Origin: Oopsacas minuta
Taxonomy: Eukaryota; Animalia; Porifera
Assembly: GCA_024704765.1 (NCBI GenBank)
Contig: JAKMXF010000321.1
Location: forward strand, 1 to 64,000
Direction: 5' to 3'
Length of the DNA stretch: 64,000 nucleotides
The notes beneath the pieces were generated by a model. It saw only the letters and a program-made list of their open reading frames with translations, was not told the DNA's origin and searched no databases. Both the position numbers and the translations under genes were made by a program. Positions within the stretch are counted from its first letter, which is position 1. Each line of letters starts with the position of its first letter. Of this stretch, positions 19,077 through 56,243 are shown one piece after another.

Positions 19077-19206
19077 ACTGTATATTATATGAATATGGAA
19101 CTGAAACTAACTATATAGTACTGGTTATAGGGAATAGAATGACCAATCAGATATCGGGTAACGGTCTGGTATAAATAGGGTAAAATACAAAAATAATAAA
19201 ATTAAA

Positions 19207-34989: not shown

Positions 34990-37900
34990 TCACAGAGAGG
35001 AGAGGTAGGGGGCAGTAGGGGTAGGAGGATCCTCACTTAGTTCTCTCAAATAGGAACTAATTATAAAGTGAACCGATATGTATTGTTCCTATAGAATATA
35101 ACATTATAAAACATAGTTACGGCTGTTGATTAACAGGTGTGAAAATATCTACAAATTATTTGCTAATCTAATTAGTCTTAGTATAATTCAATAGACTGCA
35201 ATCTCATTGGTCATTTAAAACGTGCAAAAGGTGTGAAAAATATAAACACTAAAATTCTTGATCCCAGGTGATCATCTACACCCCTGTACCAATCCTAGAG
35301 GTCACAGAAAGTTCCAAACGGACACACTGACTTTACAAATAATAATTTCCCAAAAATGAAATATGATTAACCATTACTAATTATAGTTCCATATGTAAAT
35401 GCAATATTTAGAGTTGAGAGGTGTTAATATATGAATAATCATTCATATCTCATAAATAATAATATCTCTGCGGACAATTTATTCCAAAGGTCATATTAGT
35501 GGTTTCGTAATATAATTACAAATTGTATGAGACATAAATATGAGATAACACTTCCATAAAAGTACACATTCCTGGATGATTAATCGTAACTAAGTAATTA
35601 ATTGATATTATTCACGTTTCGTAATCTAAGATGAATTCCAATTTATTAGCGTCAAAATTGAATAATTAATTGTGTTTGGTTGTGTGTAGGATTTGGAATT
35701 TATAGAATGGAAACCGTCACAGATATTACAGATTATATTTCTAATATTTTAAGCAACCAAACTGTTAGGTAATATAATTATGAATGTATGACTATTCTCC
35801 TAATAATTGTATTCTGTATGATGTATGTATCAGACACAGAACCAATCAAGTTACAGTTTCAAATAGGTGTTAACATTATTATTAACCACTTTAACCAATA
35901 GAATATCAGTCTATACATACTGGATACCTAAAATCTGATAGGTCGACACATTTTATCACCTATCTCAGGGAGTTTTAGGGAAATCGCTTTGATATTTACA
36001 GACATTCTTAGTTAATCATATTCTACACACATGCCAAATTTGGAGTTCATATCTCTTACCATTAATAATTTACATCTTCTTAGTTACCATTATGGGTATT
36101 AACTATGTGACAACTCACCAATGAATTTATCATATACTGCCTGTTGTACCGGATCCTCTTAGCCACTTGAAATATATCCACATTATTTTCACACTTAATC
36201 TGACGAATAGAAATCAGGGCTGTGATTAGCACCCCTGTAGCACCAGATCCATCCTTACAGTGTATTATAATTGGTCTTATTGGTTTCTGTTCTTGACACT
36301 TTTCAATCAGCTGTGCTACTTGTAATAACCGTTGCATACAGTCAATTGTTGTACCAAATTCACCCGCCTTAGTCCAATCCAGAAGTGTCACAAGTGTGAA
36401 CTCGTGTGCCTCTGCAAATGCCACATTAACAAGTTTCAAACGGTTGATGAGAGGGTGGATAAATGTGTTCTCGTTCATGAGGGTGTACCCACTGAACTCA
36501 TGCTGGGTCATGGGATCGGGCCAGTATTTGATCCTCCCTTCGTCATATTTCATGTCCTCAAATTCCAAATAACTCGCTAGTAACACAACAACAGGTGATT
36601 TTGTTTGGTAAATAAGTTGCATCAAATCCCTCACAGAGTCTGATACAGGCAATTGTGTCGCGATAAAAGTGGCATAGCTATCATACCCATCGACATAACT
36701 AGCGTTAATGTAATCACTGCCATCCCAGTAGGGGGCAGTAAGAACCACACGGCAGTCATCATAAGGTAGAACAGAGGTGTCAGGGTTAATCACATCCACT
36801 TCAAAAGCCCGCTCGATCGTCCGTGTGAACGATTTTTCTGTCTGATAATCTAACTCATGGAATTGTGTCGTAAACACAGGACTGTGAGTCAGCATTCGTG
36901 ACTGGTAGAATCCATGGAAGTTATTCATGTGTATACTCGTGTCTCCGTGGATTAGTTCTAATACCGTAAGATATATGAACCTATACTGGAGCCAAGATTG
37001 TACCATCTGTGTACGATACTCCCTCATTTCATTCACAACCTTAAATATGCTCAGATTCCTGCCAGCAGCAATTGGTCCTAGCATGTTATAGAGAGCTATA
37101 AATGTCCCACTCCGACCAACACCTGCTGAGCAGTGGACACATATTGTAGAGGTGTCAGTTCCAGTTTCTAGCTTTACTTTGCGAATGAATAGGATCAGAT
37201 CCTGGGGGAACCTGGGAGCACCGAAATCTGGCCAACCAATAAACTGGAACTGTTTAACAAGGTGTTTGTCCCCGTCCTCATTACGCACCATGAGCTCCCT
37301 TGTCACCCACATCTTCTCCGTTACGAGGTTAACCAGGGTAACAAAAAACTGTCCTCTGTGCTCCCCATCTCCTACTTTATCGGGCCAGTATTTTTCACAC
37401 TTTTTCTTGTTTCCTTCCAACAGTCTAGTCAACATGACCAAATGCTTTACTTGGTTCTCCCATAACATCTCCCAGAAATCATTCACCGTATTTTCTTTCG
37501 GTCCCTGAGAAGAAATGAAATTCTGTGACGTAAGGATTCCTGGTATGTGTGACGCGTTTATGTACCCTGTTCCTGGTTCCCTGGGGTCTACTTTAAGCGC
37601 CACACGGGACCTGTCGTAGGGCAGAATGTTCCTGTACCTGTTCTTACCCTCAGCAGCTGGACTGACTGCAATATCGGCTGGATATCTCATCTCTATTCCT
37701 CCGAGGGAGTTATACTCCTGGATCAGCTGATCCTCTTCCTTCTCCCATAACTCATTAACACGATCCTTGAATTCACTCTGTACAATATCAAGGGAGAATA
37801 TGACCTCACTCTCGCATATGAAAGGGGGCATGGGGTCTATTAACATCTCTTCAGAGGGCAATTTTTCTAAGCTACTGGTACCATTCTCTGTGTATAACTC

Positions 37901-39080
37901 GTTATCCAGTTTCTGTAATTGAGACATCTTCCCTCGCTTGGAGCAGAGAAAACAACAACAAACAAACAAAAATATAATTCCTAACAAACAGCATAGTACT
38001 GCTATCAAACCTAGAGCTGCAGGTAGTGCTATTATATGAAGAGGTAATTGACTTGTCGTTATTGGTATTTTTGTTTGTCCTGAGGAGGTAGAGGTGCTGG
38101 TTAGATCTGCTGTTAATCCTGTCTGAGGTTCAGTTGTTGTTTTGGATTCTGTAGTTATTGTAGTTGTTGTTGTAGTAGTTGTTGTTGTTGTTGCAATAGT
38201 TGGAGTAGTATTTGGAGTAGTCTTAGTAGTAGTAGTTCTATCAGTTGTAGTAGGGTCAGTAATTGTTGTTGTTGTAGGAGTTGTAACTGTTGTTGTTGTT
38301 ATTATTTCAGGTGTTGTTGTAACTGATGTTGTTGTTGTTGTTGTTGGTGTTTCTGCTGTTGTAGTAGGATCAGTAATTGTTCTTGTTGTAGGAGTTGTAA
38401 CTGTTGTTGTTGTTATTATTTCAGGTGTTGTTGTTCCTGTTGTTGGTGTTGTTGTTGTTTCTGCTGTTGTAGTAGGGTCAGCAATTGTTCTTGTTGTATT
38501 AGTTGGTTCTGTAGCATCTACCATAGTGGAACTAGAACTCTGTATAGTTCCAGATGTAGTTGACGTCACACTAGGAATACTAGTCACTCCTTGAGTAGTG
38601 CTGCTAACTGGAACCATAAGTGTTAAACTAACTTCAAAGAGTATTTCCCCGCCAATTATTCTTCTACACGTATACACATTGTTATCATGTTGTGACGTCA
38701 CAGTAGGTATAATGACAGAAGGATATGATTGTGCAACACCACCAGATATCAACTCCCCTGTATCAGCACTACAGGTTATCACTAAGTTATTTGTATTCTC
38801 TACCACCTCCAGTACCTGGTTAGTAGTGTAGTTAATTGGAATGTTGTCTAAAATAACTTCTATGTGTCCTCCCTCTATAAATATTATACCATAACAACCG
38901 TTACGTACCCTAAGAATGTATTACTTACCTTTAACCTCAATATCTGTAGTTCCTAAATATGTATTCTGGTTATAGCATGTGAATTTCTTTATTCCTATTG
39001 TCTTAGTGTTTGTGTAAACAGAGTATACATTAGAGGATTTGTGTGTCTCATTAGTGGAATGTCTCTCCAGTATATATCTG

Positions 39081-39125
<45 letters not shown>

Positions 39126-39616
39126 GTTGTTGTTGTTGTTTACATCTATACAATTGTATTCTCTGTTTACAGGGTCTATATCTAGTATGTATTCGAAATT
39201 CTGAGGTGCTACTGAAGGAAACTCCACATCTATTGTGTCTATAGATACATATTGTAAACAATTTTATTGCGAACAAGTAAACAAAAATATAAATTTACAA
39301 TCTGTGCCGACAGCTACATCAATTTAATTGAAGGCAGTATAAAGCGTTAATTACGTTTAGTGCCTCCAAGTAATAGTGCCAGTTAAAAAGTAACAAAACT
39401 AACCTGTATAACACCTTTGCAGAACAACAAACACGACAATAACAAACAAACAAATTCTTAAATCCATTGCTAGCTAAAATTCATGTGCTAAAATTAAGTT
39501 AACTCAAATCTATTTATATTGAAAGTTATGGGCGCCACAAAAGCCTACAAACAATAAATCAATGAATAAGACAATAAAATTAGTTCAAAAAGCTGCCACC
39601 AATATTTCTGAATCAT
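34990..39616 (-). CDS. Receptor-type PTP A: signal exon (~39616), Ig exon 39238-38929 (frame-disrupted), main exon 38874-36090 (Ig, Thr mucin stalk, TM, D1, D2), last exon 35088-34990
   Basis: KNRYRNILPYD, GWPDFG, HCSAGVGRSGTF (intact D1). D2 is HCKDGSGA. Last exon EQYISVHFIISSYL. Confidence 0.88.
38230..38470 (-). repeat. 114-bp (38-aa) tandem duplication in the RPTP A mucin stalk
   Basis: TTTPEIITTTTVTTPTT.TITDPTTT occurs twice; ATTATTTCAG at 38301 and 38415. Confidence 0.85.
39081..39140. repeat. (AAC)n microsatellite with one AC interruption inside an Ig exon
   Basis: On the minus strand: (AAC)5-AC-(AAC)14. Confidence 0.9.
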
Positions 39617-40104
39617 TGTCTACAGACACTGAGGTTTTCGTAGGTGTTTGGCGCCAAATGCTGGTGTATCACAGAGTGTACTGAATTGTATTGAATCTAG
39701 AGAGAAGAGATTATGAGTATTATTCCATTGATTAACCAAATCACCGTCTGCTCAGAAATATGTAATCAATATCTAACAGATGGAGAATTTGTTGTTTTAG
39801 CTGTTTTCATATATCAAGAATTATCCCAATATTTGTGTATAATCACTCTTAACCGCAAAGTTGTCAATTTCAATTGGACAACTTCAAAAGTGCTGTAAGC
39901 CACAATTAATTAAAACACCTCAAAGCATTGAAGAGACACAATTATTCTCCTACAAATGCAATTTTACCATTTGCAATCTCTAGTACAGCTCCTAGAGGGA
40001 GATTCCCTTCTTTCCATCCGTCCGCAGATATATAGTTTACAATTTACATGAAGCAGGAGCATGTGTGTAATTGTTCGGACGATTGTATGTAATACGTATT
40101 AGCA

Positions 40105-42278
40105 TTAAATACAACTCACCAGGCTATGTACCATCCTTGGTCTGCAATACCTCAGAGCCTTAACAATCTGGAATATATCCACATGTTTCTCTACAGTAAT
40201 CTGTGACATAGCATTATACACAGACAGCAGGACACCTGTCTTGCCTGCTCCATCCTCACAATGCACTATTATAGGTTTTCTAGGGAAATTAGCCTTTACA
40301 CTAATCATCTCGTGGACAATTCCTAGCACGCTTGTTTGGTCGATGGCTGCCCCAGCTATGTCCCAATGTAGAGAGAATATCAGATGGAATCTGTGTTGTG
40401 TATTCTCGATAGTGTCAATGAGCAGGAATTCCATTATTTCTTCCTGTTTCTGTGACAAATTCTTTAAGACAAAACCCTCAAATTCGTGTTGTGTCGTGGG
40501 CTCAGGCCAATAGATAATCCTTCCATGTTCGTAACCCATTCCAGCATATTCCTCTGGAGAAGTGAGGGCAATAACCAGTGGACATTCTGTCTGGAAGATC
40601 AGCTGTACGATATGTATTGCTGTATACGCGTTAGGATGTTGTGTGGCTATTATATCTTGGAAGCCCTGGAAGCCGTCTACATAACTCGCATTTATGTACC
40701 CTCCAAGTCCCCAAACAGAGGTCGATAGGATGGGTCTATAGTCGTCATAGGGTAGGACAGACATTTCAGGGTTCAGTGAAGCGTTTCTTGGAGAGAGGGC
40801 CTCTGAGAATGGGCGTGAGAAAGACTTCTCCGCGAAATAATCAATCTCCTCTAGTTGCATCCTAAGGACACTGGGCTTAGCTTCCAGACACGTTTTATAT
40901 ACATATGAATAATTAACACCTTGTATAAATGTGTCTCCGTGTATCAGCTCTAGACAGGCTAGATATATGAATTTATACTGAGTGAAGGTCTGTACCATAT
41001 GCGGTCTGTGTTCCCTCATCTCGTTAACAATGTTAAATATGGAAAATGGCTCACTTTTCTTGATCTCTTCTATCAGATTGTACAGGGCAATAAATGTACC
41101 CGTCCTCCCAACACCCGCACTACAATGGGTACAAATTGGGCTGTTGTCTATGATCCTGTCACTCCTGACCCTGACTATAAAGTTTAAGAGTCCCGTAGGG
41201 TACCTCGGAGCCTCATGATCTGGCCAACCTGAAAAATGAAAATGTTTCATTTTAATAATCGTCCTGAAATCCCTCTTGTTCTTAATTTCCAGCAGTCGTA
41301 CAGTTTGATCGTAATCGGATTGTACCTCAAGCAGGGTAACAAGTATGTCCCCAACACCTATTGTATCCCCTACCCTCTCAGGGAGATAGGACTCACATTT
41401 CTTCTTGTTCCCTTCCATAATTTTAGTTAACATGACAACATTTGAGATCTTCTTCTGCCATAACATTTCCCAGAACTCTAGCATCGTCTCCTTTTTTGGC
41501 GCCTGACTCGCTATAAACATTTCCTGTACAAGTAGACCTGGTATGTAGGAGGCATTAACATAATCAGACCCCTCTACCCTCTGTGCCAAATGGACCCTTG
41601 ATTTGTCATACGGGTATATATTCTTGTACCTATTCTTTCCATCTGATATATGCTCTCTGGCTGCCTCTGTCGGGTATCTTAGCTCGCTCTGTCCTAGACT
41701 TGTATACTCAGAGGTTAGTAGCATACAGTCGTTATTCCATAAGATATCCAGTTTATTCTTAAATTCCTCTTGAGCTATTGAATGAGATGTGTCCTCTACA
41801 TATTGTGTCGGTAGTGGCTCGTAATAGGCGCCAGTAACAGCGTGGAACTGTTTAGGAGAGGTGTTAATCTCCCTCAACATGGACCCGTTCCTATTCTCCA
41901 CTTCATCATCCTGTTTATGGTATTTCTTTTGTTTAAAGCCGCTATAATATTTCCATAAACAGATAGCTATAACACCAGCTGTTATTGCTGTTATTATTAT
42001 TATTGTTATTAAGAGTATTATCCCTATTATAACACCTGACATATCAGCTGATGGATGGGGTATCGTTGTGGGAGATATGTCTGTTGCGTTTGCTGTTATT
42101 ATTGTTGTTTCATATAATGCTGGTGTAGTCATTGGTGAAGTGATATATGTAGAGGTTGTATGATTAGTTGTTGTAAGTGTAATACTGGGTGAAGTTACAG
42201 GAGGTGTTGATACTGTTGTTGTTATTGCAATAATTGGAGTTGTTTGTGTTGTTGTTGTTGTTGCATTTGTTGTTGCAT

Positions 42279-42316
<38 letters not shown>

Positions 42317-43871
42317 GGCGTTGTTGTTGTTGTTTGTGTTGTTTGTGTTGTCGGTGGTGGTGTTTGTGTTGTTGTTTGTGTTGTTTGTGTTGTTTGTGTT
42401 GTTGTTTGTGTTGTAGTACTAGACTGAGTAGTTGTGGTTGTTGTAACAGCAACTAAAGATAAAGCAAACATGAACATCTGTGTATCCGTATACGAATTCT
42501 CGCTATAACTACAAGCTCTAACTTGTCATTAGTACTCAGCTGATTATTATTACTTATAGTGCTATACTTTGTAATTTGATTACGCAACACTTCCCCGATC
42601 AATAATGATAAGATAGTACAATGGATCCTCTCTAATTGTCCGCTTCGAACCCCATTGCCCATTGGTGGAGAATTAGAGAGGACACACTGTATATAATAAA
42701 GAGAATGAGTAAGAATCTGAGTGAAACAGGTCACGATACTATATAGTACAAGAGTACACAGTGTAGTCTCCCAAAACGGTCAACAGCTTTACGAAGGACA
42801 AGCTCGTGGAACGAAATAAGTTAATAATAAACAGTCAATCTCTGAGAAGCAGACATCTCACCTACAAAGGAGAATATCTAATCTCCAATCTGTCTGTTAT
42901 TGGGAGACTCCACTGTACTTATATGAGTTATATCATACTATACTTACCCCCGGGTACAATATCTAGTGTGATTATAACAATGGATGTTCAAACACGCCTC
43001 TAGTACATTTAAATTTATAAGGTCCACTTCCTGTAGTGTTCGTCAGTGTAAATGTTGTGCTAGGATTAGTAGTTGGTCCTATTATACCACCAGTTGAAGT
43101 ATATATGATCCCTGTGCTAACTTCACACGTAATACTAACATCAGTATTAACAGGAATAGATATTGTATAATAATCATCAGAGGATAACGAGTATAGAGAA
43201 GTAGATCCAGAATACTCTACTGTGAAGTTAGCTATATCTGTATACAAATAATTAAAGTCAATGTTATCATATTTGTAACTACAATGTGTGTGCTCTCCTG
43301 AATATCACTTTCTTACCTTTCAGTGTAAGGACCATGTCTCCCATACTGTTTCCACCAGAGTAACACCCAATACTATAAGTACCAATACCCTTAACAACCC
43401 CATAAACTCATATGCATTAATTTGATTAGTATATTCCACATTGTTATATCTCCAGATTAATCCATCAGCTGATCCTCCATTTAAACACCTGTACTCCAGC
43501 TGTTGACTGTCTATATCAGCTGTGTATGTGAATGAAGTATTTGCTGATTGTATGTCAACATCAATAACAGGTTCTGTAAACAAAGATGTAAACAAACATT
43601 GACAAAAAGCCTCCAGAATGAAACTCAAATTTTAGGCAACAAAACTGATATTACAGACTTCTCAGTTTTGTGATAAAAATATTTTATCTTCTTTCGACTT
43701 TCATTTCAAATTGTCCAAAATCTCACCGATTTTCGAATAGATTCGTGCGCCAATTGGCTCTGAACCCGGACAAGACAAGTTACAAACAAAACATAAACAA
43801 CAACATATCTCACCTGCAAAACAAACTTGTATCGTAAACAAAATAGTAAACAAACAAGAAAACAATCTCAT
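40105..43871 (-). CDS. Receptor-type PTP B: signal exon 43871-43814, Ig exons 43573-43317 and 43237-42948 (both frame-disrupted), degraded segment, then intact stalk-TM-D1-D2 ORF; 3' exon not resolved
   Basis: Signal MRLFSCLFTILFTIQVCFA. KNRYKNIYPYD, GWPDHE, HCSAGVGRTGTF. D2 is HCEDGAGK. Confidence 0.82.
42240..42440 (-). repeat. Coding (ACA/CAA)n Thr/Gln mucin repeat of RPTP B
   Basis: TTQTTTQ..TTTTTTTT encoded by degenerate GTT repeats on the plus strand. Confidence 0.9.
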
Positions 43872-44642
43872 TCAATCCTGAAATTATTCTGTATTTTAAA
43901 TTAGCTCTGATAAAATTTTAATACAAAAGCTATACATATATCATATATGAAGCAATTGAGAGATCCACCACAGAATTCATTTACATGTTTTCATAGACTA
44001 ATCTCTAGCTTATCTCTACACTCATTAGTTTAATAAGAAACACAGCCTATTCTTATGCCATCCCATGCCACAACGACACTATTATTATGACTATTAGGTG
44101 GTTAACTGAATATCAGTGGGCGTGTAGTGTTGCTTTGATAATTTTATTATAGACAAGATTAGAAATACAAAGTTGGTGTATTGAGGAGGTGTAAGCCCTC
44201 CCCTCTTTAATAATTAGTCTATACCATCATGAATATATCTTGTAACACCTATAGTGTCCTTATGCCCTACATGTAACCAATAATTATACAAATACTATCA
44301 ACCATGGATTATTCAGGAGTTAGTGGAGGATAAGAAATAATGAATTATTAGACAGAATAGAATGCACTAAACTCCTGTTATATCTAAGCTGAGGGGACGG
44401 CGATGATTACTCAGATATAACCAATAGAATATATGGTACTGTAACGGTTTGGGGCTATATTTATACAATTTCACACCTTGATATTACTGGAGTTGATTGT
44501 ATGTATATTTTGAAGAAAATGTTTATTTATGAATAATTTCAAAAATAGAATATTTACACAAACCATAAAATATTCAAAAGCAATAACAAAACAAATAATA
44601 TAAACAGGGAGAATAATATTAACAACAAGAGGTGTTAATTAA

Positions 44643-47600
44643 TCATATATTCATCTGACAGTATTCATTAATGAGGTGATAACAGGATAGATAATGTTCC
44701 TAAACAAATAAACAACAAATAATAGAACAAAATATAAATAATCAACAAACAAGGCGAATTCTATTCTCACATTGTTTACATGTTTACTTTGAATATAATA
44801 TTATCCCAGAACATACTTATATAGCTATTTATAAATCATATAAACAGCTGTTAAAATAGTAAATAACCTAATTATATAACTCACCAGGGTAGGTACCATG
44901 TTCCTCCTAGAGTTCCTCAGCTGTTTAACCATCTGGAACACATCAATACAGCTGTTCTCCTGCATCCCTCTTATAGTGTTATAGACTGTCAATAGTACTC
45001 CTGATTTACCGATACCGTCACTACAACAGATAATCAATTTCCTGCCAGGAGTGTTTTGTTGTTGTTTGCTGATTAGTTCCAGGAGGGTGAGGACACCAAC
45101 AACATCCGTTACCCTACCTGTCTCCTCCCAGGTTGGAGATATAAACTGTGTAAAGGAATGTTCGTCATTTTCATGGCTACTTAATACTTTCATTTTTTGT
45201 TGAATTAGGAAAGACGAATTTTGAGATTTTTCTGTTATAACTGAGAAACCATCAAAGTCTTTCCTGCCACTCTCCTCTAACCAATAATTCACACGATTAG
45301 ACATACCACTTCTCACCTTTTGGTACTCATCTTGTGTAAACAACAAAACAACAACAGGTTCCTCCAACTGGTAAACAAGTTGCAAGTAATCTTGTATAGT
45401 ATTTTCAGTAGGGAATAAAGTAGCGACTAGTTCGTAGCTGTCAATATAACTGGCGTTAATATATTCACAGGGCCAACTAGGGGAGTACAGGATCACCCTA
45501 TTGGTATCGTATGGGAGGATATCTTTAACAACATTCTTGTCTTCGTTGCTAGGGTCATGTCCAGCTGTCTGTGGGTAGCAAAACGAGTGATCTGTTTGGT
45601 AGTTCAGTTCTTGGAATTGTTCTTTGAAAATATCAGTAATATCCCCATGTGACTGTTGGTACAATTTATAGGTCTCACAGTAATCCCCGTTTGGAATAGA
45701 AGTAGTTCCGAAAATTAGTTCCAGAATGGCTAAATAAATGAATTTATATTGGTTGAAGGTCTGCACCATCTGGGGCCGGTACTCCCTCATCTCATTCACT
45801 ACACGGTATACACTAATTGGAGCCTCCAAGTTAACACCTTCAATGAGGTTGTATAGTGCAATAAATGTACCGGTCCTGCCGACACCAGCGGAACAGTGGA
45901 CCACCAGATGTGTCCTCTCCTTCTTTCGATGCTGCTTAACCTTCTGAGTGAATTCCAGCAGGTTCATGTACAGTTGTGGTACATCATGATCTGGCCATGT
46001 TACATAATGGAACTGAGTTATCATATAGTTTCGGTTGTCCTGTCCTCTTATCCCTAATTTCCTTACTATATAAGAAGGATACATGTCCTCTCTGTGTAGT
46101 GTAACTTCGATATTATTGAATGTAGAACTGGAACCAACCACTTTAGGCCAATAAGTTGTAGACTTCTCCTTACCCATCTCTACCACACGAGTCAGCATAA
46201 CTATCGTACACACCCGTTGCTCTAAGATCATCTCCCAGAAATCAGTTTCTGTATTGGTCTTAGGAGCCTGTGTAGCTATAAAGGTGTCGGATAAATGGAA
46301 CCCAGGAATTGTGGCAGCATTAATGTAATCAGATTCAACAGCTGTTTCTAGGACAACACGCGATTTGTCATATGGATAAATTTGTTTGTATTTATTCTTG
46401 TTTTTGTTGATGGGGAGCAGAGCATGGGAGCAATCGTACCTCAAATCCTGGCCCCCTAACATCCTATACTCCTTCTCCATCCTATAGTTACTGAGAAGAG
46501 AGTTCAAGTGGTTCTTGTACTTGTTAGGTGGCACAAGTATGGCATGTGGATTATCTGCGTATTTGTTGTAAGTTGATTGATACAATGTTTCACCAAAATT
46601 TTCGTATTGGTGCAATTCATTGTCCTCTAGACCGATATCGTCCCCCTTATCACTAGCCATAGGTTCCAATGAGACCTCCAACTGGTCCAACATCGTGTAC
46701 CCATCCTTGTCTACCGGGGGTGATATCAGGGGACTAGTCACAGGGGTCTCTGTTTGTGTTAACTTCTCATAACCAGGCTTTTTGGTGATAGAATGAATAA
46801 CAGCTGGTTTTGAGTTAGGAGAATCCTCGAGATTTGATAGGTTAATATATTGTTTGTTTATATCAGGTGTTATATCCTCTTCATTGTTTGTTAGCATTTG
46901 TTTACTATAACCTGTTTTGTTTACCTTCCTTCTCTTCAACACCAATATTATGATCAACAAAACAACAATGATGACTAGCACTATCAATATGAGGACACCA
47001 GCAATGAGACCAATAATCCCATAGAGAGTAGATGGCTTAGATATCAGCTGATTATGAATATAATATATCTGTGTGTTGCTATTATTAGTATTGTGTAATC
47101 TATTCATTACTTCTACTGTAATGGTGTAATGGAATGTGTATGATACATCTGTGAGATAATATTCTGTCATATTTGTAGTTATATCTTTATGATGAATAGA
47201 CTCATTCACACTATACACGGATATTATGTATATCTCATTAGCTAGCTGGGGGTAAGAGGTCTCCCAGACCAATCTAACACCTTACTAGAAGGTGCTATAG
47301 TATGTAGAATGAGTACTTCCTGAGTGTATATGTCTACAGGAATATATAGGGAGGATAGCTACAAATTCGAATGGTTAAATATAGCAGTCATTATTAGGGG
47401 GGTCAATTCTTTGACAAAATACTAGCAAGATCTACTCATGTACTCAAGGGTGCAAATTCAAAGCCAATTGGGTGAGTGCATTTAAGAATATTCCAGAATG
47501 AGAATCAGCCAATCAAATAGTAAATATAACTAACCTTCAACTCTTAAATCAGCTGTTTTAACACCTAATACTGATCCCCTATCTGTCTGTACAGAACATT

Positions 47601-48231
47601 TATGAGTTATATTTCCTTTCATCAATTCCAATGGGATACTTGCTTGGTTACCAATCTGATTCTTAAGAATGCTACCAGTACTAACATCAATCAATATAAT
47701 AGTTAGATTATCAGCAGTAGAGTCAGTAGTAATACTACAAGTAATAGTGACGTCATCATATCCTACAAACACTGTATTGTAATTTGGTGTATAGGATAGA
47801 TGTATGGATACTGAAGGATGAGGAGGTGTTATTGTTGTGGGAGAGGTTGTTATTGTTGGAGAGGTTGTTTGAGTTGTGACCGTTGATGGCATCAGTGTCG
47901 TTTGTGTTGTAGTAGCAGTTATTATTGGTAAAGAAACTAGAATGCTATGCTCTCTGTATTGAGTATTAGTTTCAGTAATATATTCCATTGTAGAACAGTA
48001 GTAATATCCTGTTCTATTAGCTGGTAGGTCTGTAGATAGATGTAACTTTAGAAACCCTCTTGACGACATCGATTCTGTCTCTTCAATTAATCTCTCCCCT
48101 AGTCCTGTATTCATTTCCCCTCTGTAAAACCAGAGAGATGACTGAGTTTTACTAGAAACACACAATATAGCTACATCTCCAGTTATTACAATAGGTTCAT
48201 CCTCTCTTAGTACTCTATATGTATCTTGTAG

Positions 48232-48275
<44 letters not shown>

Positions 48276-49055
48276 GGTATAATCCACTTCCTAGATGGAA
48301 TAGTTAATACGGTAGCATTGTATGTGATTACTAATTACATAACAAACCTATTGCATGTAGTGTAACCAGTTTAACAAATTCTCTCTTTTCTGTATTATCA
48401 TATTCATTAGTACAGGCATAACTTAATTCATAATGTATAGTGAATAGATCTATTGTCAGGGGATTATCTACATCATTCTTTTTAACACTATCAAGTGTAT
48501 AATCCCATTTAGCTGTACTAGCATTGCAATTCACTATTACATTATCTGTCATTACAGGAACTAATACTCCAGTAGTGTCTTCTATTTCTCTGATTTCAGT
48601 TGTGTTGTCATAGCTAACTGTTATTGTTGTGTTATCTAAAATGAGTTAATAAATACAAATTGGTAAGTAATATATTATATTAATAACTCACACTTAATGG
48701 CAATAATAACAGAGTTGCTGTTTTTATACTCTCGTGTATCAGTTCCATATACAGCTCTACAATAGTATGGTAAATAGCTCCAACCAAATTGTGTAGCTAC
48801 ATCTTCAAACCTCAGTATATTGCTACCTGTATCTTCATCAGTAGTAGTCTCCGGGTTATAGAACCAAGTAACATGATGTCATTAACATCATAAGCATCAG
48901 AACTAACTGTACAGTTTAGTTCTGAAATATTATTGTATCCATTAGTGTAGTATGTGTATGTATCATCTGTAAATCCATGAAACATAATATCAGGATCAGC
49001 TGATACTATAAATTGTAATATGCAAAAACAGTAAATACAACAAAACACCTTTCAT
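44643..49055 (-). CDS. Receptor-type PTP C: signal (MKGVLLYLLFLHITIY), several Ig-like domains (first exon frame-disrupted), poly-Q, FN3, TM, D1, D2; last exon 44699-44643
   Basis: KNKYKQIYPYD, TWPDHD, HCSAGVGRTGTF. D2 is CCSDGIGK. VRLVW..YTITVEVMN gives an FN3-like unit. Last exon EHYLSCYHLINEY. Confidence 0.85.
48231..48276. repeat. (CAA)15 coding microsatellite (poly-Q) in the RPTP C ectodomain
   Basis: In frame: GSGLY-Q15-LQDTY. Confidence 0.9.
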
Positions 49056-49299
49056 ACTCTGCAGTACATACACTGTACAGACAGAGCTTATATAGCTATG
49101 AAACTTGATAGTTCCAATATTTCATAAATACATGGTTTAATATGGAACTATAAAATAGGATAATTTATCTTATTGAGGTCACACTTAATCCCATTTGTAA
49201 ATAGACAAAATAATTACTCATACAATCATTAACAAATACAAATAGCAATAACAATAAATATAGCAGGTATTACATGTCCTTATAAGGAGCTAATTCTTC

Positions 49300-51922
49300 T
49301 CATTTGGGAGGTGTTAGTTTCATAATAGAGAACTCTTTCAAAAGCTGATAGCATTTCTGATATTCTTCCTAAGGGATAGAATACAGGATAATTTAGTTAA
49401 TGCTAAAATTAGGGAGAGATGATAGAATCATTTTGGAGGTGTTAAAATTCATATATTATAAGGGGATAGCGACATTTCTAGGCACTGAAACATCTATTCG
49501 ACGTTGGGCATCTATCTAAGCATGAGGTGAACAGGTTACTGTATTTTACTTGCTAATAATATCAACACTCCTCTAGTTACCATTACATGCTGTTATACAT
49601 ATAACATTAATAGTGAATTGCATTCTAAGGAATACCTACCAACCTTCTCGGTATCCATGGATACCCCTGGTATTTTAGAAGATAAACACGTAAGAATTTG
49701 AGATTTAGGGAATGATTTGCAATTGCATGTAATTCCCTAAAATTGTATTTATGAATTTACAAGTTAGGAATCTAAGGAATTTTCGAACTCTTTGGAAATT
49801 AGAATATGGTAACAACGAGCCCGTGTATAATGGGCTGATTATCTGTACAAATAATCTGTGATTCCTACGTCTATTTGTCAATTAACTATTTGTATATTCT
49901 TGAACTTACCTTACAGCAGATCATCCCCATTCTCTGATTTCTGAGGTTCTTAACTACCCACGGCAGATCCAAATCCTGCCCTCCTTGTATCTGAGAACAC
50001 CCATTGATAGCCGCTAGCATGATCCCTATCTTTGTAGACCCATTAATAGATTGTAACACTACTGGTCTATCCCCTGTCACCCCTGTTCTGAAGCTTTGTA
50101 TGTATGCCATAGCCTCAATACATTTCTTATTGCTGATGGGTAGATCGTTCTTATCCCAATCATCGTACACGAATAGTTGGAATTGGTGCTGTATACGTTG
50201 CTTCGTTGGTTCATCATAAGCTACTGTGACGTCATATTTCAGCATTCCTTCTGTCTGCACTGGTTTGCTACCGATGACACTGAAGTTTCTGACTGTTTTA
50301 TTATACAAAGAGGGTGCCCAATAGTTAATCGCCTTGATGAAACCCCCGGACATGTGAGTGATCTCTGCTTCCTTTGCTAGTACGAACACTATCTTCACCT
50401 GACTCGTGATTAACATCCAGAAGAACTCATTAAGTGTATTTGCACTTGGATGTACTGCTGCTATAACAGGAGCACCTCCACATTCCATGTGTATATAAGA
50501 AGCGTTAAGATAGTTTTGTCCGGTTGGAGAGTCCTGCATACAAACTATATTATCGTCATAAGGATATGTGTGCATTACTTGTCCTTTGGTTAAGTTTGAG
50601 TTTGCAATAGTCTGCTGTTTCGTAAAATACGCTAAGTTGCAGAATACGTCTACTTTCTCATACTCGATCGTAACTGAGTTTGTGACATCACTCTCTGGAT
50701 CAATCTCTCCAACATCGACCTTAACTAAATCCTGTATACTGATGGGTTGTAGTGCTTGCAGGTGTTCTAGAATTGATATGTATATCAGCTGATAATGCAC
50801 GAATTGTGTGATTAATCCAATTCTGTGATCCAAGAGGGAATTTATAATTTCATAAACTGAAAACGGAGATCTGTCTTTGATGGCTTTCATGCTCTCAAAT
50901 AACGTGATTAATATCCCAATGATAGAATTAGAATTCTTTGACACAAAGCATAGTTTCGCATTTTTCTCCTTATCAGACATAATCTCGTTAATCTGATCAA
51001 CCAGGGATAGGATAATGGGGTATATGCAAGGTGGTTCCTGCTCGATAATATCAGCCTTAATTTCAATCTGATGGAGGATAAATGATTTCTTATTGTCAAC
51101 CTCTTCCAAACTGACAATAAAAGTTCTATGCGTGGAGAACTCGTAAACTGTTTTAAAGGTGAATTTAACTTTAACAATTGATGCAAACACTTGATCAGAA
51201 TTCCGTTCTTTGGGCCAATATGCACCCTTCTCAGGGTCTATCTCAGCTGTTAGTGAGACGATACAGCGGATATTTTCCTGCCAAACCATTTCCCAGAAAT
51301 CTCCAAGCGTTGAGGCTTGTGCAGTTACGATTGGGTACTGAGCTACTACATAATTAACATCTCGATAGTAACCAGGTATAACACTAGCGTTTATGTAAGC
51401 ACAGTCCTTCTTTAAAATAAGCCTAGTCATATCATACGGTATGAAATTAGCATTGATGTTCTTCTTTCGGTTATACATAGACTTTGCCTCATCACTTGCA
51501 TACCTGAACCTAGACACAGCTAAACTCTGAAACTCTTTGACTAATCCAATCTTCTTACCTCTCAGCTGTTGGTGTAAATATGTAATAAACTCTTCCTTGT
51601 TGTATGGGTTTAACCAGACGTTCTTGTTCGCGTATGTAACACTTAACTTGATGACATTTGGACCTGATTTCTGGGCGCTTTCTAGAGTTTCGTATTCCAT
51701 ACCTGGCTCTCCTCCATCTGATAACTTGACGGAGTTAACCCTGCCGAGAGGAACCGGTGGAATCTCTGGATGGGATGGGGGTTGGTTATATCGGATAGGA
51801 GCATCCTCTGACACGTTTCTAGATTCTCTCAATTTCTTAGCATTTTTGCGGTTTTTTCTTGCCTTCTTTCCAAGAGTTTTTTTAGAACGACAACAACAAC
51901 AGAAACAACAGAAACAGGGCAT
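49300..51922 (-). CDS. PTP D: ectodomain-less tandem-domain pseudophosphatase starting MPCFCCFCCCCRSKK; last exon 49368-49300
   Basis: Two PTP folds (KKNINANFIPYD, YINAS, YPYDDN, YLNAS). The signature motifs are replaced by FVSKNSNSII (D1) and QSINGSTK (D2). Confidence 0.85.
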
Positions 51923-52140
51923 TTTCACAAATAATTAACTTCTATTATTTGTATTTAAATAGAATACAATTCTATATCACGTTACGACTATATCTTGTCA
52001 TTTGATAGTACCCTTGTAGAAGAATATGAAATGCATGTGATTAGTAATTGAGAGAAAGCATAAAAGAAGACAAACAAAATAACAAACAAATGCAAAAAAT
52101 ATAATACAAAATACACTTTTCTATCTTTCAACCTTCAGAA

Positions 52141-52180
52141 TTAAACTTTAGTTGTGACGTCATTTTGGATGTTTGTAGAC

Positions 52181-52217
<37 letters not shown>

Positions 52218-55200
52218 GATTTTTGGTGATAAAATCTCTGATAATATCAAAACAAACAATGTACAAGTCCTAAAAAAACAAGAAAATTTGTAATAATAAT
52301 TATCAAGTATAATTTGCAATTTTGCTATCTGTCTAATCAATCCATTTTCATGTTACATCATAAAAACTATTCCATAGCAACAGCAATGCACTTAGTAATG
52401 TAATAAATGTATAATTTTCCTGATTTCTAATAATTGCAATTACATCACATACCTACCACTTACATAATGCATCCTACATACAATACACTCTCGCTAATCC
52501 GAACTGCACTGCTCCAGTTAGATTAGCAAGATACTGGAGTACAATTTTTCTAAAGTTGCATACTTGCCAGCTGGCCCATATTTGGCGAAACATCCAGTTT
52601 GTCAGACATGTGTTGGGGGCTAATGATGCTAATGTCCCACCAAAACTTGTCGTACAGTATAATACAAATATGCTAAGTCCCGTAATGTTCCGCTAAATTC
52701 GTACCTTAAGTCACGCGTTTATCCCAACTCAAATGGCAAGCATGAGTTGTACAAAAGATGAAAAGACTGCCAACATGTGTGTATTATGTATTTGTCCACA
52801 GGATAATTGGCTAGAATAAGGTCTTTATGGACATTCTAAAGATTTTCCAAGGTTTTATGCTCTGTTCGGATTAGTTAGGGTCTACTGTATTGACACCGCA
52901 TTGGTATTACTACAATCGACGTATAGCACGTATTATTATACAACTTACAACAGGTGATACCATTTTCTCTCTCCCTCTCCTCATAGACTTTACAATATGA
53001 AATATATCAACTTTATCCTCCTCATTTATCTCTCGTATCCCCAGACAACACGCCATGAGTACTCCTGTCTTACCAACACCGTCCCAGCAATGTACTATAA
53101 TCGGAGTATGCTGTGCTTTCTGTTTGACCTCCAAAATAGTCTCACATATGGTTATTATCGGCTGGGAGTTAGTGGGTGTATTGTTGTCCAAGAAGCTAAG
53201 ACATATGTACTGGACAAAGGTATGTGTTCTCTTCTCCGAATGATTTGTTATTTTTATCCTATTACGGATAACACCAGCTAGATTAGCAGTATGAAGGGTC
53301 TCAATGCTATACATCCCAAAGCCCTGTTTCTCATCACTCCAGTAGCAAACAGACCCATCGAGACCTGTCTCTAGGAGAGCGTACTCGTCATCTGTAGCCA
53401 AGAGAATCACCAGCTGTGCGGAACATTGATACACCATCTGGATGAATTCCAGAATAGTCTCTCTAACCGGATGAATAGTAGCGATAAAATATTGAGAATC
53501 CTTATCTCCATCTACATAACTAGCGTTTATATAATCTCCAGCTTCCCAGAACTCAGAGAATAACTCCACCCTTGTATCATCATACGGTAACACGTTAGGG
53601 ATCGTATTCTTAGACTTGTTAATGGGATTAAGAGCGTCCTCCTGTGACCTGAAGTAAGTCTTCTCGACCTGATAATGCAACTCAGTGAACTGTTGATGGT
53701 AAATAGACTTGTAGCTGTATTCTTTCAACGAATCCACATAAGTCTTAACTGCTTCAGAGAACTCACTAGCCTTCAGAGAGGTGTTACCGTGAATTAGTTC
53801 CAGTACCAGTAGATACACAAACTTATACTCATCGAGTGTTTGCAGTACATACATTCGCTCGTCCAATAAATTCAATACTGTGTCAAACACAGAGAATGGA
53901 ATACTCTTGTCAATCATCTCCATCAGGGTGTAGCTTGCAAGGAACAGCCCTGTCTGACCACTTCCAGTGACACTATAAACCATTACAGGGGTATTATCCG
54001 GTATCATCTGGTTTTTGAAACTCTTCATAAACTTCACGAACTCTTGGTGGAATCTGGGAACACCTGTACGTGACAGCCACTGCTTGAAGTGTCCATGCAC
54101 CACGTGTTGAATATTACCTAGCCCGTTGATAATTTTAAATCTGCTAAATGTGTAACTGGCGCCTATTTCCTCACCCTCAAAAGCTACCTTCAGCTTACCG
54201 AACTCTTTCATGGGATTTTTATCCGATGGTAGATTGACTTGTTGTACAGCTGGTACGAGCATAACTATATTACTGATATTCTGCTCAGCAACTAACTGCC
54301 AGAATTCATTCACTGTATTATCCATAGGTGCCTGTGCCACTATGAACAGCTGATCGATATTAGGTACTCGTATTAAAGATGCATTAATATAATCAGATGG
54401 TTTAATTGACATACTTTGACGTAATTTAATCCTGTTATGGTCATATGGCACGAGTTTGAAATCTTTGTTCTTTTGAATTTCACTGTGAAGATTTGCTACA
54501 TTGGACATATGGCGCATTTTTGAGGTGTCTAGGGCATCGAATTCCTCTCTAAGCTCGACACAATCCATCGCCCAAAGGGTGTCGAGGTGTTTCTTAAAAT
54601 GTTCCGGTAATATTTTGCGTTTATACTGATCCAAACCTGCACCAAATGTTGTCGTTACTTCGATTGGTTCCGCTAGTGAACTTTGTATAATCCTCTGGTA
54701 ATTAAATCTTCTACCCGTAATGCTGTCCTCTTCCACATAATCACCTAACACCTCTGCCTTCCTGTACCCCATGTTCTTCCTCTTGTTACCTCTGCAACAA
54801 CAACAACAACAACAAACAATACAACAACAGAGTAGGATCAATACTATGCATACAGCTACACATACAAACACCACTATGATGAATCCTAATTCATTAATCA
54901 GCTGGGCTATAGGATTACTGGTAGAGGTATCTGGTGGTTTAGTGGCAGAAGTTGATGGCACTGTTGGAGTGGTGGACATGGGTATTGAGGTGCTAGATTG
55001 TGGCACAGTATTATAAAGTGACATGGATGAGGACATACTTGTACTTGGCATTGAGCTGCTAGAAGTTGGCATGCTGCTAGAAAGTGGTATACTGCTAGAA
55101 AGTGGCATACTGCTAGAAGTTGGCATACTGCTAGAAAGTGGTATACTGCTAGAAAGTGGCATACTGCTAGAAAGTGGCATACTGCTAGAAAGTGGCATAC

Positions 55201-56243
55201 TGCTAGAAGTTGGCATACTGCTAGAAAATGGCATACTACTAGAAAGTGGCATACTACTAGAAAGTGGCATACTACTGGAAAGTGGCATGCTGCTAGAAAG
55301 TGACATACTGCTAGAAGGTGGCATACTACTAGAAAGTGTCATACTACTTGAAAGTGGCATACTGCTAGAAGTTGGCATACTACTAGAAAGTGGCATACTA
55401 CTAGAAAGTGGTATACTACTGGAAAGTGGCATGCTGCTAGAAAGTGACATACTGCTAGAAGTTGGCATACTACTAGAAAGTGGCATACTACTAGAAAGTG
55501 GCATACTACTGGAAAGTGGCATATTGCTAGAAAGTGACATACTGCTAGAAGTTGGCATACTACTAGGAAGTGACATACTACTAGAAAGTGGCATACTACT
55601 GGAAAGTGGCATGCTGCTAGAAAGTGACATACTGCTAGAAGTTGGCATACTGCTAGAAAGTGGCATACTACTAGAAAGTGTCATACTACTAGAAAGTGGC
55701 ATACTACTGGAAAGTGGCATATTGCTAGAAGATGGCATACTGCTAGAAAGTGGCATATTGCTAGAAGGTGGCATGCTGCTAGAAAGTGGCATACTGCTGG
55801 AAAGTGGCATACTGCTAGAAAGTGGCATACTGCTAGAAAGTGGTATGCTACTAGAAAGTGGCATACTGCTAGAAAGTGGTATGCTACTAGAAAGTGGCAT
55901 GCTGCTAAAGAATGGTATGGGGGACACACTTGTCCCTGGTATTGATGTGGCATTAGGTGTCGTAGAAGACATAAAACTACTGGTTTGTATTATAGTGCTA
56001 GATGACATAATTGGCACAGGTGTAAACGACACAATTTGTGTCATACTTGATGAATCCTGAATTCCAATCGCAGATGACTGTTGTTGGGGTAAACTTGAAC
56101 TCGTAGGAGATTCTAAATATAAACAATTTAAGAATAAAACAGCCCAAAAGATGGAATTAACTCATAAACTAACCAGAAGTAATCTGTCCATGTAAACTGA
56201 CACAGAAGATAGCACAGAAAATTGACACATAAACAATATTCAT
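52141..56243 (-). CDS. Receptor-type PTP E: signal exon 56243-56174, (SSSMPL)n stalk, TM with Cys string, catalytically dead D1, degenerate D2; last exon 52269-52141 ending TTKV*
   Basis: Signal MNIVYVSIFCAIFCVSLHG. D1 motif is YSVTGSGQ with no WPD. D2 is HCWDGVGK. The 129-nt last exon is in frame. Confidence 0.88.
52559..52744. mobile_element. 186-bp MITE-like element in the last intron of RPTP E
   Basis: 11-bp TIRs CATACTTGCCA / TGGCAAGCATG (1 mismatch), flanked by the direct repeat AGTTG on both sides. Confidence 0.6.
55040..55910 (-). repeat. 18-bp coding minisatellite, about 47 units, encoding (P/S/T)LSSS(M/I)
   Basis: CTAGAAAGTGGCATAC(T/A) is iterated on the plus strand. Confidence 0.97.

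What the first reader, a model, noticed from the sequence alone, without database searches (positions are those of the whole stretch)
34990..56243. Five-gene RPTP array mixing active receptors, a dead receptor and a cytosolic decoy
Seen: A, B and C keep HCSAGVGR and WPD in D1 and have Ig(/FN3)+mucin ectodomains. E has only a repeat stalk and a dead D1. D has no ectodomain and both domains are dead. All share the terminal intron position and a short last exon (EQY/EHY/EEY/DLY in A, C, D, E), showing local tandem origin, yet they are highly diverged. Established: paired active/inactive receptor clusters with variable ectodomains typify immune and allorecognition loci; CD45/CD148 use bulky glycosylated stalks for size-based segregation. 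Inference: a lineage-specific phosphotyrosine recognition system tuned by stalk length and catalytic status.
Basis: partly seen in the sequence, partly recalled or inferred. Interest (0 to 1): 0.78.

Follow-up and report, generated by a model that had tools for sequence, protein, structure and literature searches.

The report
Glass-sponge receptor tyrosine-phosphatase gene cluster
Five neighbouring genes of the glass sponge Oopsacas minuta encode three working-looking and two dead-looking membrane tyrosine phosphatases; the cluster is old and kept in other glass sponges, and the working ones share their outer parts with phosphatase-less receptors elsewhere in the genome, much as vertebrate paired receptors do.

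Summary
Window 34990-56243 (minus strand) of Oopsacas minuta carries five tandem-domain PTP genes, E-D-C-B-A. A, B and C have an intact D1 active site. E (signal peptide plus a stalk of 47 six-residue repeats) and D (no signal peptide, no TM, Cys-string start) have dead D1s. D's D2 also lacks the cysteine; the other four D2s keep it but lack the P-loop arginine. All five share a phase-0 intron in the D2 Q-loop.

That intron marks at least 24 genes on 11 scaffolds. Only A and B are clear local sisters, and monophyly of the array is rejected (AU p=0.0008). The order E-D-C-B-A with 1:1 orthologues recurs in one other glass-sponge assembly, and parts of it in four more. Cytoplasmic dN/dS is 0.06-0.18, dead genes included, so this is not a fast-turnover allorecognition locus. 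D is more likely lipid-anchored than cytosolic, and neither dead gene looks able to trap phosphotyrosine.

New here: A and B share Ig exons with phosphatase-less, tyrosine-motif receptors on scaffolds C66 and C16. The A/C66 tract is 99.4% identical through introns, which indicates gene conversion. Other agents of this scan reported similar pairs elsewhere in this genome. B and C ectodomain exons carry single-base frame breaks in this assembly. Function is untested.

The parts
34990..39467 (-). Gene A: active receptor PTP. Exons 39467-39405 (signal peptide), 39239-39144, 39064-38930, 38875-36119, 35088-34990 (last exon plus stop).
   Evidence: NCBI model P0005 maps exactly to these exons; two PF00102 domains.
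36956..37648 (-). A D1, with intact active-site motifs
36119..36781 (-). A D2: Cys kept, P-loop Arg replaced by Ala, no WPD
38581..39456 (-). Tract of A (part of exon 1, exons 2-3, the Ig2 part of exon 4, and the introns between) nearly identical to a copy on scaffold C66. Read as a gene-conversion tract.
   Evidence: Counted over 39420-38600: 5 mismatches in 821 bp, against 58 in 520 bp of flanks; Fisher p 1.4e-19
39613..43871 (-). Gene B: active receptor PTP. Exon 1 43871-43814 (signal peptide), Ig exon about 43590-43317, Ig exon about 43250-42948, big exon about 42452-40120, last exon 39696-39613.
   Evidence: orthologous exons in sp1-sp3
43404..43406 (-). Single-base frame break in B's first Ig exon. 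One base is missing relative to the C16 paralogue; the orthologues read in frame.
40948..41640 (-). B D1, with intact motifs
40120..40779 (-). B D2: Cys kept, Arg replaced by Lys
44643..49055 (-). Gene C: active receptor PTP. Exon 1 from ATG 49055 to donor 48692, Ig exons within 48645-48334 and 48303-47533, FN3/TM/PTP exon about 47340-44885, last exon 44699-44643.
   Evidence: P0034 covers 47170-44873 plus the last exon.
48865..49005 (-). Two opposite single-base frame shifts in C exon 1, near 49000 and near 48870
   Evidence: Orthologues in sp2 and sp3 read this exon in one frame
47283..47285 (-). Single-base frame break at the start of C's FN3-like exon
   Evidence: The C66 and C16 paralogues have one more base and read through
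45719..46408 (-). C D1, with intact motifs
44885..45547 (-). C D2: C-C for H-C, Arg replaced by Lys
46898..47856 (-). C membrane-proximal Ig, FN3-like module and TM. This stretch has 90-91% identical copies in the phosphatase-less genes on C66 and C16.
49300..51922 (-). Gene D: tandem pseudophosphatase with no ectodomain and a Cys-string/polybasic N-terminus. Exon 1 51922-49910, last exon 49368-49300.
   Evidence: P0121 is 100% identical; no TM; in-frame stop 12 nt before the ATG
50768..51472 (-). D D1, dead (no catalytic Cys, no Arg, no WPD)
49916..50596 (-). D D2, dead (Q-S for H-C)
52141..56243 (-). Gene E: stalk-only receptor pseudophosphatase. Exon 1 56243-56173, exon 2 56112-52949, last exon 52269-52141.
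55056..55907 (-). E stalk: 18-bp unit repeated 47.3 times, a Ser/Pro/Met/Leu-rich six-residue repeat
53798..54478 (-). E D1, dead (Y-S for H-C, Gln for Arg, no WPD)
52955..53620 (-). E D2: Cys kept, Arg replaced by Lys
35089..36118 (-). Terminal phase-0 intron of A. The homologous introns are B 39697-40119, C 44700-44884, D 49369-49909, E 52270-52948.

Best explanation
This is an old, conserved cluster of a glass-sponge-specific family of receptor tyrosine phosphatases.

Shown:
- A, B and C encode type-I membrane proteins with Ig-like modules (C also an FN3-like one), Thr-rich stalks in A and B, one TM, a D1 with every catalytic motif, and a D2 that lacks the P-loop arginine.
- E is a signal peptide, a repeat stalk, a TM and two inactive domains. 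D is two inactive domains behind a cysteine string.
- Both dead genes are intact and under purifying selection in other glass sponges.
- The Ig exons of A and B, and the membrane-proximal part of C, recur in phosphatase-less receptors with multi-tyrosine tails. The A copy is nearly identical through its introns.

Inferred:
- A to C dephosphorylate tyrosines at the membrane when their ectodomains are engaged.
- The phosphatase-less partners bind the same ligand and are phosphorylated on their tails. Ligand-driven co-clustering would then set a kinase-dependent signal against a built-in phosphatase, which is paired-receptor logic.
- D (palmitoylated, and myristoylated in some species) and E sit at the inner membrane face. 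They would act without catalysis, as scaffolds or competitors for partners of the active members through PTP-fold surfaces. This is how PTPRU and RPTP D2 domains work. They are unlikely to act as phosphotyrosine traps.

The ligands are unknown; they could be self, microbial or matrix.
For: Species: gene D is 100% identical to an O. minuta NCBI protein, and the genome has 365 scaffolds and 61 Mb. Domains and motifs. TM and anchor. Family clade 100/100 on a stem of 1.08; A+B 100/99. Synteny and 1:1 orthologues: sp3 has E-D-C'-C-B-A then cyclin; sp2 has C-B-A; sp1 has E-D and B-A; sp4 and sp5 have TRIM-NHL-E-D. The dead motifs of D and E are the same in the orthologues. dN/dS between sp1 and sp3: E TM plus cytoplasmic part 0.12, D 0.09, A D1 0.13, A D2 0.06, B big exon 0.18; Ig and FN3 exons 0.40-0.63. 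Phosphatase-less partners: C16:71764-74371 has B-like Ig exons joined to the C-like Ig/FN3/TM and a Tyr tail; C66:~80350-82465 has A-like Ig exons joined the same way. Conversion tract: A versus C66, 5 mismatches in 821 bp against 58 in 520 bp, p 1.4e-19. The same tail type lies between D and C in sp1 (two copies) and sp3. PTPRU precedent for a doubly inactive RPTP that binds substrates of active relatives: PMC7320164.
Against: There are no expression, protein or activity data. Activity of A to C is inferred from motifs only. B and C ectodomain exons are frame-broken in this assembly, so in this animal they may not make full receptors. O. minuta D lacks Gly2, so myristoylation is not general. 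The tails do not fit canonical ITAM or ITIM spacing. The chimeric genes on C16 and C66 have no annotated model that I could retrieve, and the C16 tail is shorter. The joining of D with E in the tree (88/93) involves two long branches. The other assemblies are unnamed, so the age of the cluster is given only by sequence divergence.
Confidence: 0.6

Rival explanations
1. One reading: a polymorphic immune or allorecognition system in which stalk length and catalytic status tune phosphotyrosine signalling, with D and E as decoys for the active receptors.
For: The family is lineage-specific and expanded (123 PF00102 matches in 61 Mb). Ectodomain dN/dS is 0.40-0.63, and 1.18 for B's second Ig exon against its C16 copy. 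Copy number changes between species: F-type genes in sp2, sp4 and sp5, two C' copies in sp1, a duplicated Ig exon pair in sp2's B. Gene conversion occurs between paired ectodomains. E's stalk differs in length and repeat unit between species.
Against: Orthologues are 1:1 and gene order is conserved in other species. The dead and active members of the array do not share ectodomains. D and E lack the residues needed to hold phosphotyrosine. No dN/dS value for an aligned globular ectodomain exon between species exceeds 1. No population or expression data are available.
Confidence: 0.17
2. Ordinary birth-and-death of a large gene family with no functional pairing. A to C would be adhesion or developmental RPTPs. 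The C16/C66 chimeras would be by-products of non-allelic recombination on their way to decay. D and E would keep some structural role unrelated to the others.
For: There are a D-last-exon relic next to the C16 gene and a stray C-like Ig exon before the C66 gene. B and C carry frame breaks. The C16 tail is truncated relative to C66.
Against: Reading frames stay open across the chimeric junctions. The tail type with its five Tyr motifs is conserved in sp1 and sp3. Three other loci of this genome show the same pairing (not checked here).
Confidence: 0.2
3. Assembly artefact: the frame breaks and the chimeric C16/C66 copies come from mis-assembly or incomplete polishing of similar paralogues.
For: The assembly is a long-read/short-read hybrid that was polished afterwards. 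Two of the four frame breaks lie in stretches that have 95-97% identical paralogues.
Against: The two checked against paralogues, in B's Ig exon and C's FN3 exon, are not simple homopolymer shortenings. The C exon 1 breaks lie where no close paralogue exists. The chimeras have distinct flanks and open frames. C' genes exist in independent assemblies of other species.
Confidence: 0.1
4. D and E are decaying pseudogenes.
For: Catalytic residues are lost in both.
Against: Both have intact open frames. Orthologues occur in 4 other fetched assemblies (D in 7 by the protein search). dN/dS is about 0.1. The degenerate motifs are themselves conserved.
Confidence: 0.02

Closest known systems
Tandem-domain receptor PTPs of bilaterians (PTPRA/PTPRE, class R4; LAR/PTPRS/PTPRD, class R2A)
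   Same: Type-I membrane protein with an active membrane-proximal D1 and a D2 of true D2 type. B's D2 aligns best with the D2s of PTPRE, PTPRS and PTPRA. The best named hits outside sponges are vertebrate PTPRA.
   Different: No class-specific orthology: D1 scores 168-180 bits to R2A, R2B, R3 and R4 alike. The family D2 has Lys or Ala for the P-loop Arg and no WPD. There is a family-specific phase-0 intron in the D2 Q-loop. The ectodomains are unrelated to those of the bilaterian classes.
PTPRU, described by its authors as the only human RPTP with two pseudophosphatase domains (PMC7320164)
   Same: E is a receptor with both domains inactive, and D is the same without the receptor part. A non-catalytic role in competition with active relatives is the working model.
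   Different: PTPRU keeps the catalytic Cys and binds substrates. E-D1 and both D domains have lost Cys and Arg. D has no ectodomain or TM and carries a Cys string instead.
CD45 (PTPRC)
   Same: Heavily O-glycosylatable stalk, FN3-like module, active D1 and inactive D2 (from my own knowledge of CD45). The family D2 P-loop begins H-C-x-D-G, as I recall for CD45 D2.
   Different: CD45 is not the best match for either domain (274.9 against about 330 bits for the tandem chains). B's D2 aligns with CD45's D1, not its D2. This is a resemblance, not orthology.
Vertebrate paired receptors (KIR, SIRP, PILR, Siglec pairs), from established knowledge
   Same: Two genes carry near-identical ectodomains on different signalling parts, kept alike by gene conversion (A and the C66 gene; B and the C16 gene).
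   Different: One arm carries the phosphatase itself instead of an ITIM that recruits one. The other arm has a multi-Tyr tail that fits neither ITAM nor ITIM. The partners lie on different scaffolds in O. minuta. An immune role is untested.
IA-2/PTPRN (single-domain receptor pseudophosphatases), from established knowledge
   Same: Membrane proteins with a conserved inactive PTP domain.
   Different: IA-2 has one domain and a luminal domain of secretory granules. There is no relationship beyond the PTP fold.

Membership tests
Classical tandem-domain receptor PTP | Two PF00102 domains in one chain | tested here: met
   All five genes, E 8e-59 to 2e-114
Classical tandem-domain receptor PTP | Signal peptide, ectodomain and single TM | tested here: inconclusive
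   Met for A and E. B and C have these parts but with frame breaks. D has none of them.
Classical tandem-domain receptor PTP | D1 with C(X)5R P-loop, WPD loop, Q-loop and pTyr-recognition loop | tested here: inconclusive
   Met in A, B and C and their orthologues. Not met in D and E. Catalysis itself was not tested.
A named bilaterian RPTP class (R1 to R8) | Closer to one class than to the others, with a matching ectodomain | tested here: not met
   Near-equal PDB scores across classes. The genes fall in a sponge-only clade apart from the LAR-like O. minuta genes and vertebrate PTPRA.
Pseudophosphatase | PTP fold kept, catalytic residues replaced, sequence kept by selection | tested here: met
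   D and E: PF00102 hits, motifs lost identically in orthologues, dN/dS 0.09-0.12
Pseudophosphatase | No catalytic activity | not testable with these tools
   Needs an enzyme assay
Paired receptors | Two genes with near-identical ectodomain modules and different cytoplasmic parts | tested here: met
   A versus the C66 gene (99-100% in the Ig exons); B versus the C16 gene (97% in Ig exon 2, 90% in Ig exon 3). The partners have a Tyr-motif tail and no PTP domain. This is not met between members inside the array.
Paired receptors | Homogenisation by gene conversion | tested here: met
   The near-identical A/C66 tract spans introns and has sharp borders, p 1.4e-19
Paired receptors | Opposite signalling outputs and a shared ligand | not testable with these tools
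   Needs cell assays
Allorecognition locus | High allelic polymorphism | not testable with these tools
   Only one assembly of this species was available
Allorecognition locus | Rapid turnover without stable orthologues | tested here: not met
   E and D are 1:1 in sp1, sp3, sp4 and sp5. A, B and C are 1:1 where found (A, B in sp1-sp3; C in sp2, sp3), in the same order. Some turnover exists: F-type genes, C' copies.
Dual-acylated (SH4-like) membrane anchor | Met-Gly-Cys start, or a Cys cluster next to basic residues | tested here: inconclusive
   A Cys cluster followed by basic residues occurs in 7 of the 8 D proteins; P0127 is N-terminally shorter. Gly2 is present in three called starts and at an internal Met of a fourth, but not in O. 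minuta D. Acylation was not tested.

The most novel reading that the evidence does not exclude
Glass sponges run a paired-receptor recognition system built on receptor phosphatases. The same gene-converted Ig ectodomain sits on a built-in tyrosine phosphatase (A, B) and on a phosphorylatable multi-tyrosine tail (the C' type genes). Two conserved pseudophosphatases, one lipid-anchored, modulate the balance. The system would be used to tell self, symbiont or pathogen apart in a syncytial animal that lacks most canonical immune receptors.
Probability: 0.22. Interest if true: 0.85.

Novelty: new variant of a known kind. Interest (0 to 1): 0.6.

Why it matters
Paired receptors kept alike by gene conversion are a hallmark of vertebrate innate immunity. 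Finding the same logic in a glass sponge, with the phosphatase fused directly to the receptor, would push that design principle to the base of animals. It would also provide a compact 61-Mb system in which to test it.

Separately, D and E are natural, conserved examples of doubly inactive PTP proteins. D has no ectodomain and a predicted lipid anchor. Such proteins are useful for asking what PTP folds do without catalysis.

I found no paper that describes this family. The O. minuta genome paper does not contain the word phosphatase, and two literature searches came up empty.

Tried and rejected
- Pfam on ten ectodomain pieces at E<=5 gave no Ig or FN3 hit. The ESM Atlas gave only Ig-type leads at 0.86-0.90, below its own trust level.
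- CD45 kinship, suggested by the H-C-x-D-G start of the D2 P-loop, was rejected: CD45 is not the best match and the D2 does not align with CD45's D2.
- The all-domain tree did not finish its careful search. The quick tree that replaced it joins long branches (D, E, two single-domain genes), so I relied on the careful concatenated D1-D2 tree and the AU test.
- dN/dS between O. minuta and the other species was not used, because synonymous sites are saturated at about 70% amino-acid identity. The closer pair sp1/sp3 was used instead, and tblastx segments containing stops were discarded.
- The third homologue search, with the C66 tail exon, returned two unnamed proteins and no O. minuta model because of the length filter.
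- The idea that D is an alternative 3' part of E was rejected: E has its own last exon and stop, and D has a TATA-like element and its own ATG.
Exons were searched one at a time by reference, or the database proteins P0005, P0034 and P0121 were used.
- No contig looked human.


Full report
**Source.** The window is the first 64 kb of scaffold C321 of a 61.46-Mb genome in 365 scaffolds. Those figures match the published Oopsacas minuta assembly (PMC10280926). Gene D is 100% identical to an NCBI O. minuta protein, P0121. P0005 and P0034 are NCBI models of genes A and C. No contig looked human.

- On the minus strand, in the order E-D-C-B-A, lie five genes. Each has one large exon with two PF00102 domains.
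- In D1, genes A, B and C keep the pTyr loop, WPD, HCSAGVGR and the Q-loop.
- E has Tyr-Ser for His-Cys, Gln for the P-loop Arg, and no WPD. D has neither Cys nor Arg in D1, and Gln-Ser for His-Cys in D2.
- D2 of A, B, C and E keeps the Cys but has Lys or Ala for the Arg and no WPD.
- Each gene has a phase-0 intron five residues after the Met of the D2 Q-loop, and a short last exon. These start EQY (A), IQY (B), EHY (C), EEY (D) and DLY (E). The NCBI models use the same last exons.
- A, B, C and E have one TM segment each; D has none.
- D's ATG follows an in-frame stop by 12 nt and lies 218 nt after E's stop.
- Pairwise identity among the five is 22-50%.

**Ectodomains.**
- A: signal peptide, two small Cys-pair modules and a Thr-rich stalk.
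- B: signal peptide, two Ig-like exons and a Thr/Gln-rich stalk.
- C: several Ig-like exons and an FN3-like module next to the TM.
- E: signal peptide, then 47 copies of a six-residue repeat and nothing else.
- Pfam sees none of the Ig or FN3 modules.
- An AF2 model of one C exon (pLDDT 67; the second half about 80) matches two-Ig proteins such as Siglec-10, Dscam and PECAM-1 at E about 1e-4.
- The FN3-like piece gives only weak FN3 matches.
- I searched exons one by one and did not join them into spliced models.

**Frame breaks.** In this assembly, B's first Ig exon loses one base near 43405. C's exon 1 shifts frame twice, near 49000 and near 48870. C's FN3 exon loses one base near 47284. Orthologues and paralogues read through at each place they were compared. 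There is no break in the 13.6 kb of the five large exons. I cannot tell assembly error from real lesions.

**The family is genome-wide.**
- A six-frame PF00102 search gives 123 matches in the genome.
- After fetching 30 further loci, the D2 domains of A to E fall in one clade (SH-aLRT 100) with all other short O. minuta RPTPs. About a dozen of these are receptors with a single D2-type domain and tyrosine motifs.
- Every O. minuta member, at least 24 genes on 11 scaffolds, reads Val-Ser through a GT donor at the same Q-loop position. The LAR-like genes read straight on.
- The intron therefore marks the family, not a local origin.
- In a careful D1-D2 tree the family has 100/100 support. A+B are sisters (100/99). 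E+D join on long branches (88/93). C groups with a gene on scaffold C33 (100/99) and then with the clusters on C345, C312 and C17.
- Holding the array genes together costs 39.7 log-likelihood units (AU p=0.00076).

**The cluster is old.** Unnamed ENA assemblies hold the same neighbourhood.
- sp3 has flank-E-D-C'-C-B-A-cyclin.
- sp2 has C-B-A-cyclin.
- sp1 has flank-E-D and, 67 kb further on, B-A.
- sp4 and sp5 have TRIM-NHL-E-D followed by other family members.
- Orthologues are 1:1, and the dead motifs of D and E are the same in them.
- Between sp1 and sp3, dN/dS is 0.06-0.18 in cytoplasmic parts (E 0.12, D 0.09), 0.40-0.63 in Ig and FN3 exons, and about 0.7-1.2 in stalks, where alignment is unreliable.
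- D orthologues start with a Cys cluster, and three of the called starts read Met-Gly-Cys or Met-Gly-Ala-Cys.
- There is some turnover: an extra F-type gene in sp2, sp4 and sp5, two copies of it in sp5, and a doubled Ig exon pair in sp2's B.

**Phosphatase-less partners.**
- Searching the genome with the ectodomain DNA found two chimeric genes.
- On C16, B-like exons 1-3 and the start of the stalk run in frame into C's membrane-proximal Ig, FN3 and TM. A short tail with several tyrosines and a stop follows. A relic of D's last exon lies just upstream.
- On C66, A's exons and the start of its stalk are joined to the same C-derived module and a longer tail.
- Neither has a PTP domain nearby.
- A and its C66 copy differ at 5 of 821 positions from intron 1 to the end of Ig2, against 58 of 520 in the flanks (p 1.4e-19). 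The introns are included, so this is gene conversion.
- B's second Ig exon against its C16 copy has dN/dS 1.18 over 90 codons.
- The same tail type, with five conserved Tyr motifs, lies between D and C in sp1 (two copies) and sp3. The ancestral array therefore probably included such a gene.
- Other agents of this scan report similar pairs at three other places in this genome. I did not check those.

**Mechanism.** What is shown is anatomy, conservation and sequence exchange. The following steps are inferred.
- A to C are active phosphatases.
- Their partners bind the same ligands and signal through phosphorylated tails.
- D and E act without catalysis at the membrane, as PTPRU does (PMC7320164).
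- D and E are unlikely to trap phosphotyrosine, because the Arg and the pTyr-loop Tyr are gone.

**Comparison and verdict.**
- D1 and D2 are equally distant from several bilaterian classes, so the genes are not orthologues of distinct ancient classes.
The conserved order argues against a fast-turnover locus, while the converted pairs argue for recognition receptors.
- I rate this a new variant of known kinds (RPTPs, pseudophosphatases, paired receptors) of moderate to high interest.

Noticed in passing
G000:C16:71764-75870 (loci L043, L044): A chimeric phosphatase-less receptor. It joins B-like Ig exons (86-97% nt identity) to the C-like Ig/FN3/TM (90%) and a Tyr-motif tail. A 93% identical relic of D's last exon and a C exon-1-like piece lie upstream. 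An NHL gene and a TRAF/MATH-like gene flank it.
   Followed up: yes
G000:C66:79658-82465 (locus L045): A second chimeric phosphatase-less receptor. It joins A-like exons (99-100% in the Ig exons) to the C-like Ig/FN3/TM and a longer tail with YxxL, YxxM, YxxV and YxN motifs. A stray C-like Ig exon lies just upstream.
   Followed up: yes
L022-L029, L024, L012:5963-7576, L013:7383-8642 (scaffolds C111, C222, C66, C345, C16, C99, C17, C312): About a dozen receptors with Ig or FN3 ectodomains, a TM, a juxtamembrane stretch with repeated Tyr motifs, and a single D2-type domain with an inactive P-loop. All share the family's terminal intron.
   Followed up: partly
window 43404-43406, 47283-47285, about 48870, about 49000: Single-base frame breaks confined to the ectodomain exons of B and C. 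The NCBI model of C starts at an internal Met (47170), and no NCBI model of B came up.
   Followed up: partly
L002:1-791, L036:14267-16539, L037:14135-16702 and 18890-21436: A sixth family type ('F': FN3-like module, TM, D1 with WPE and C-C in the P-loop). It lies after D or before C in sp2, sp4 and sp5 and is absent from the O. minuta array. sp5 has two near-identical copies.
   Followed up: partly
L002:6961-7893 and 8918-9614: In sp2 the pair of Ig exons of gene B is present twice, so the number of Ig modules differs between species.
   Followed up: no
window 56848-58440 (+ strand) and 29600-34100: The flanking genes are syntenic in the other assemblies. A TRIM-like RING/B-box/filamin/NHL gene lies upstream of E, and cyclin-like and other genes lie downstream of A.
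   Followed up: partly
window 51923-52140: Only 218 nt separate E's stop from D's ATG. A TATTTAAATA element lies about 30 nt before the ATG.
   Followed up: no
window 39081-39140, 48226-48276, 52181-52218: Long trinucleotide runs (20, 17 and 13 copies): in A's intron 2, near the 5' end of the open frame that holds C's double-Ig exon, and as a poly-Gln run in E's last exon.
   Followed up: no
window 54785-54913 and 51880-51922; L036, L037: E's post-TM cysteine cluster followed by basic residues resembles D's N-terminal Cys string. This fits D having arisen from an E-like receptor by loss of the ectodomain and TM.
   Followed up: partly
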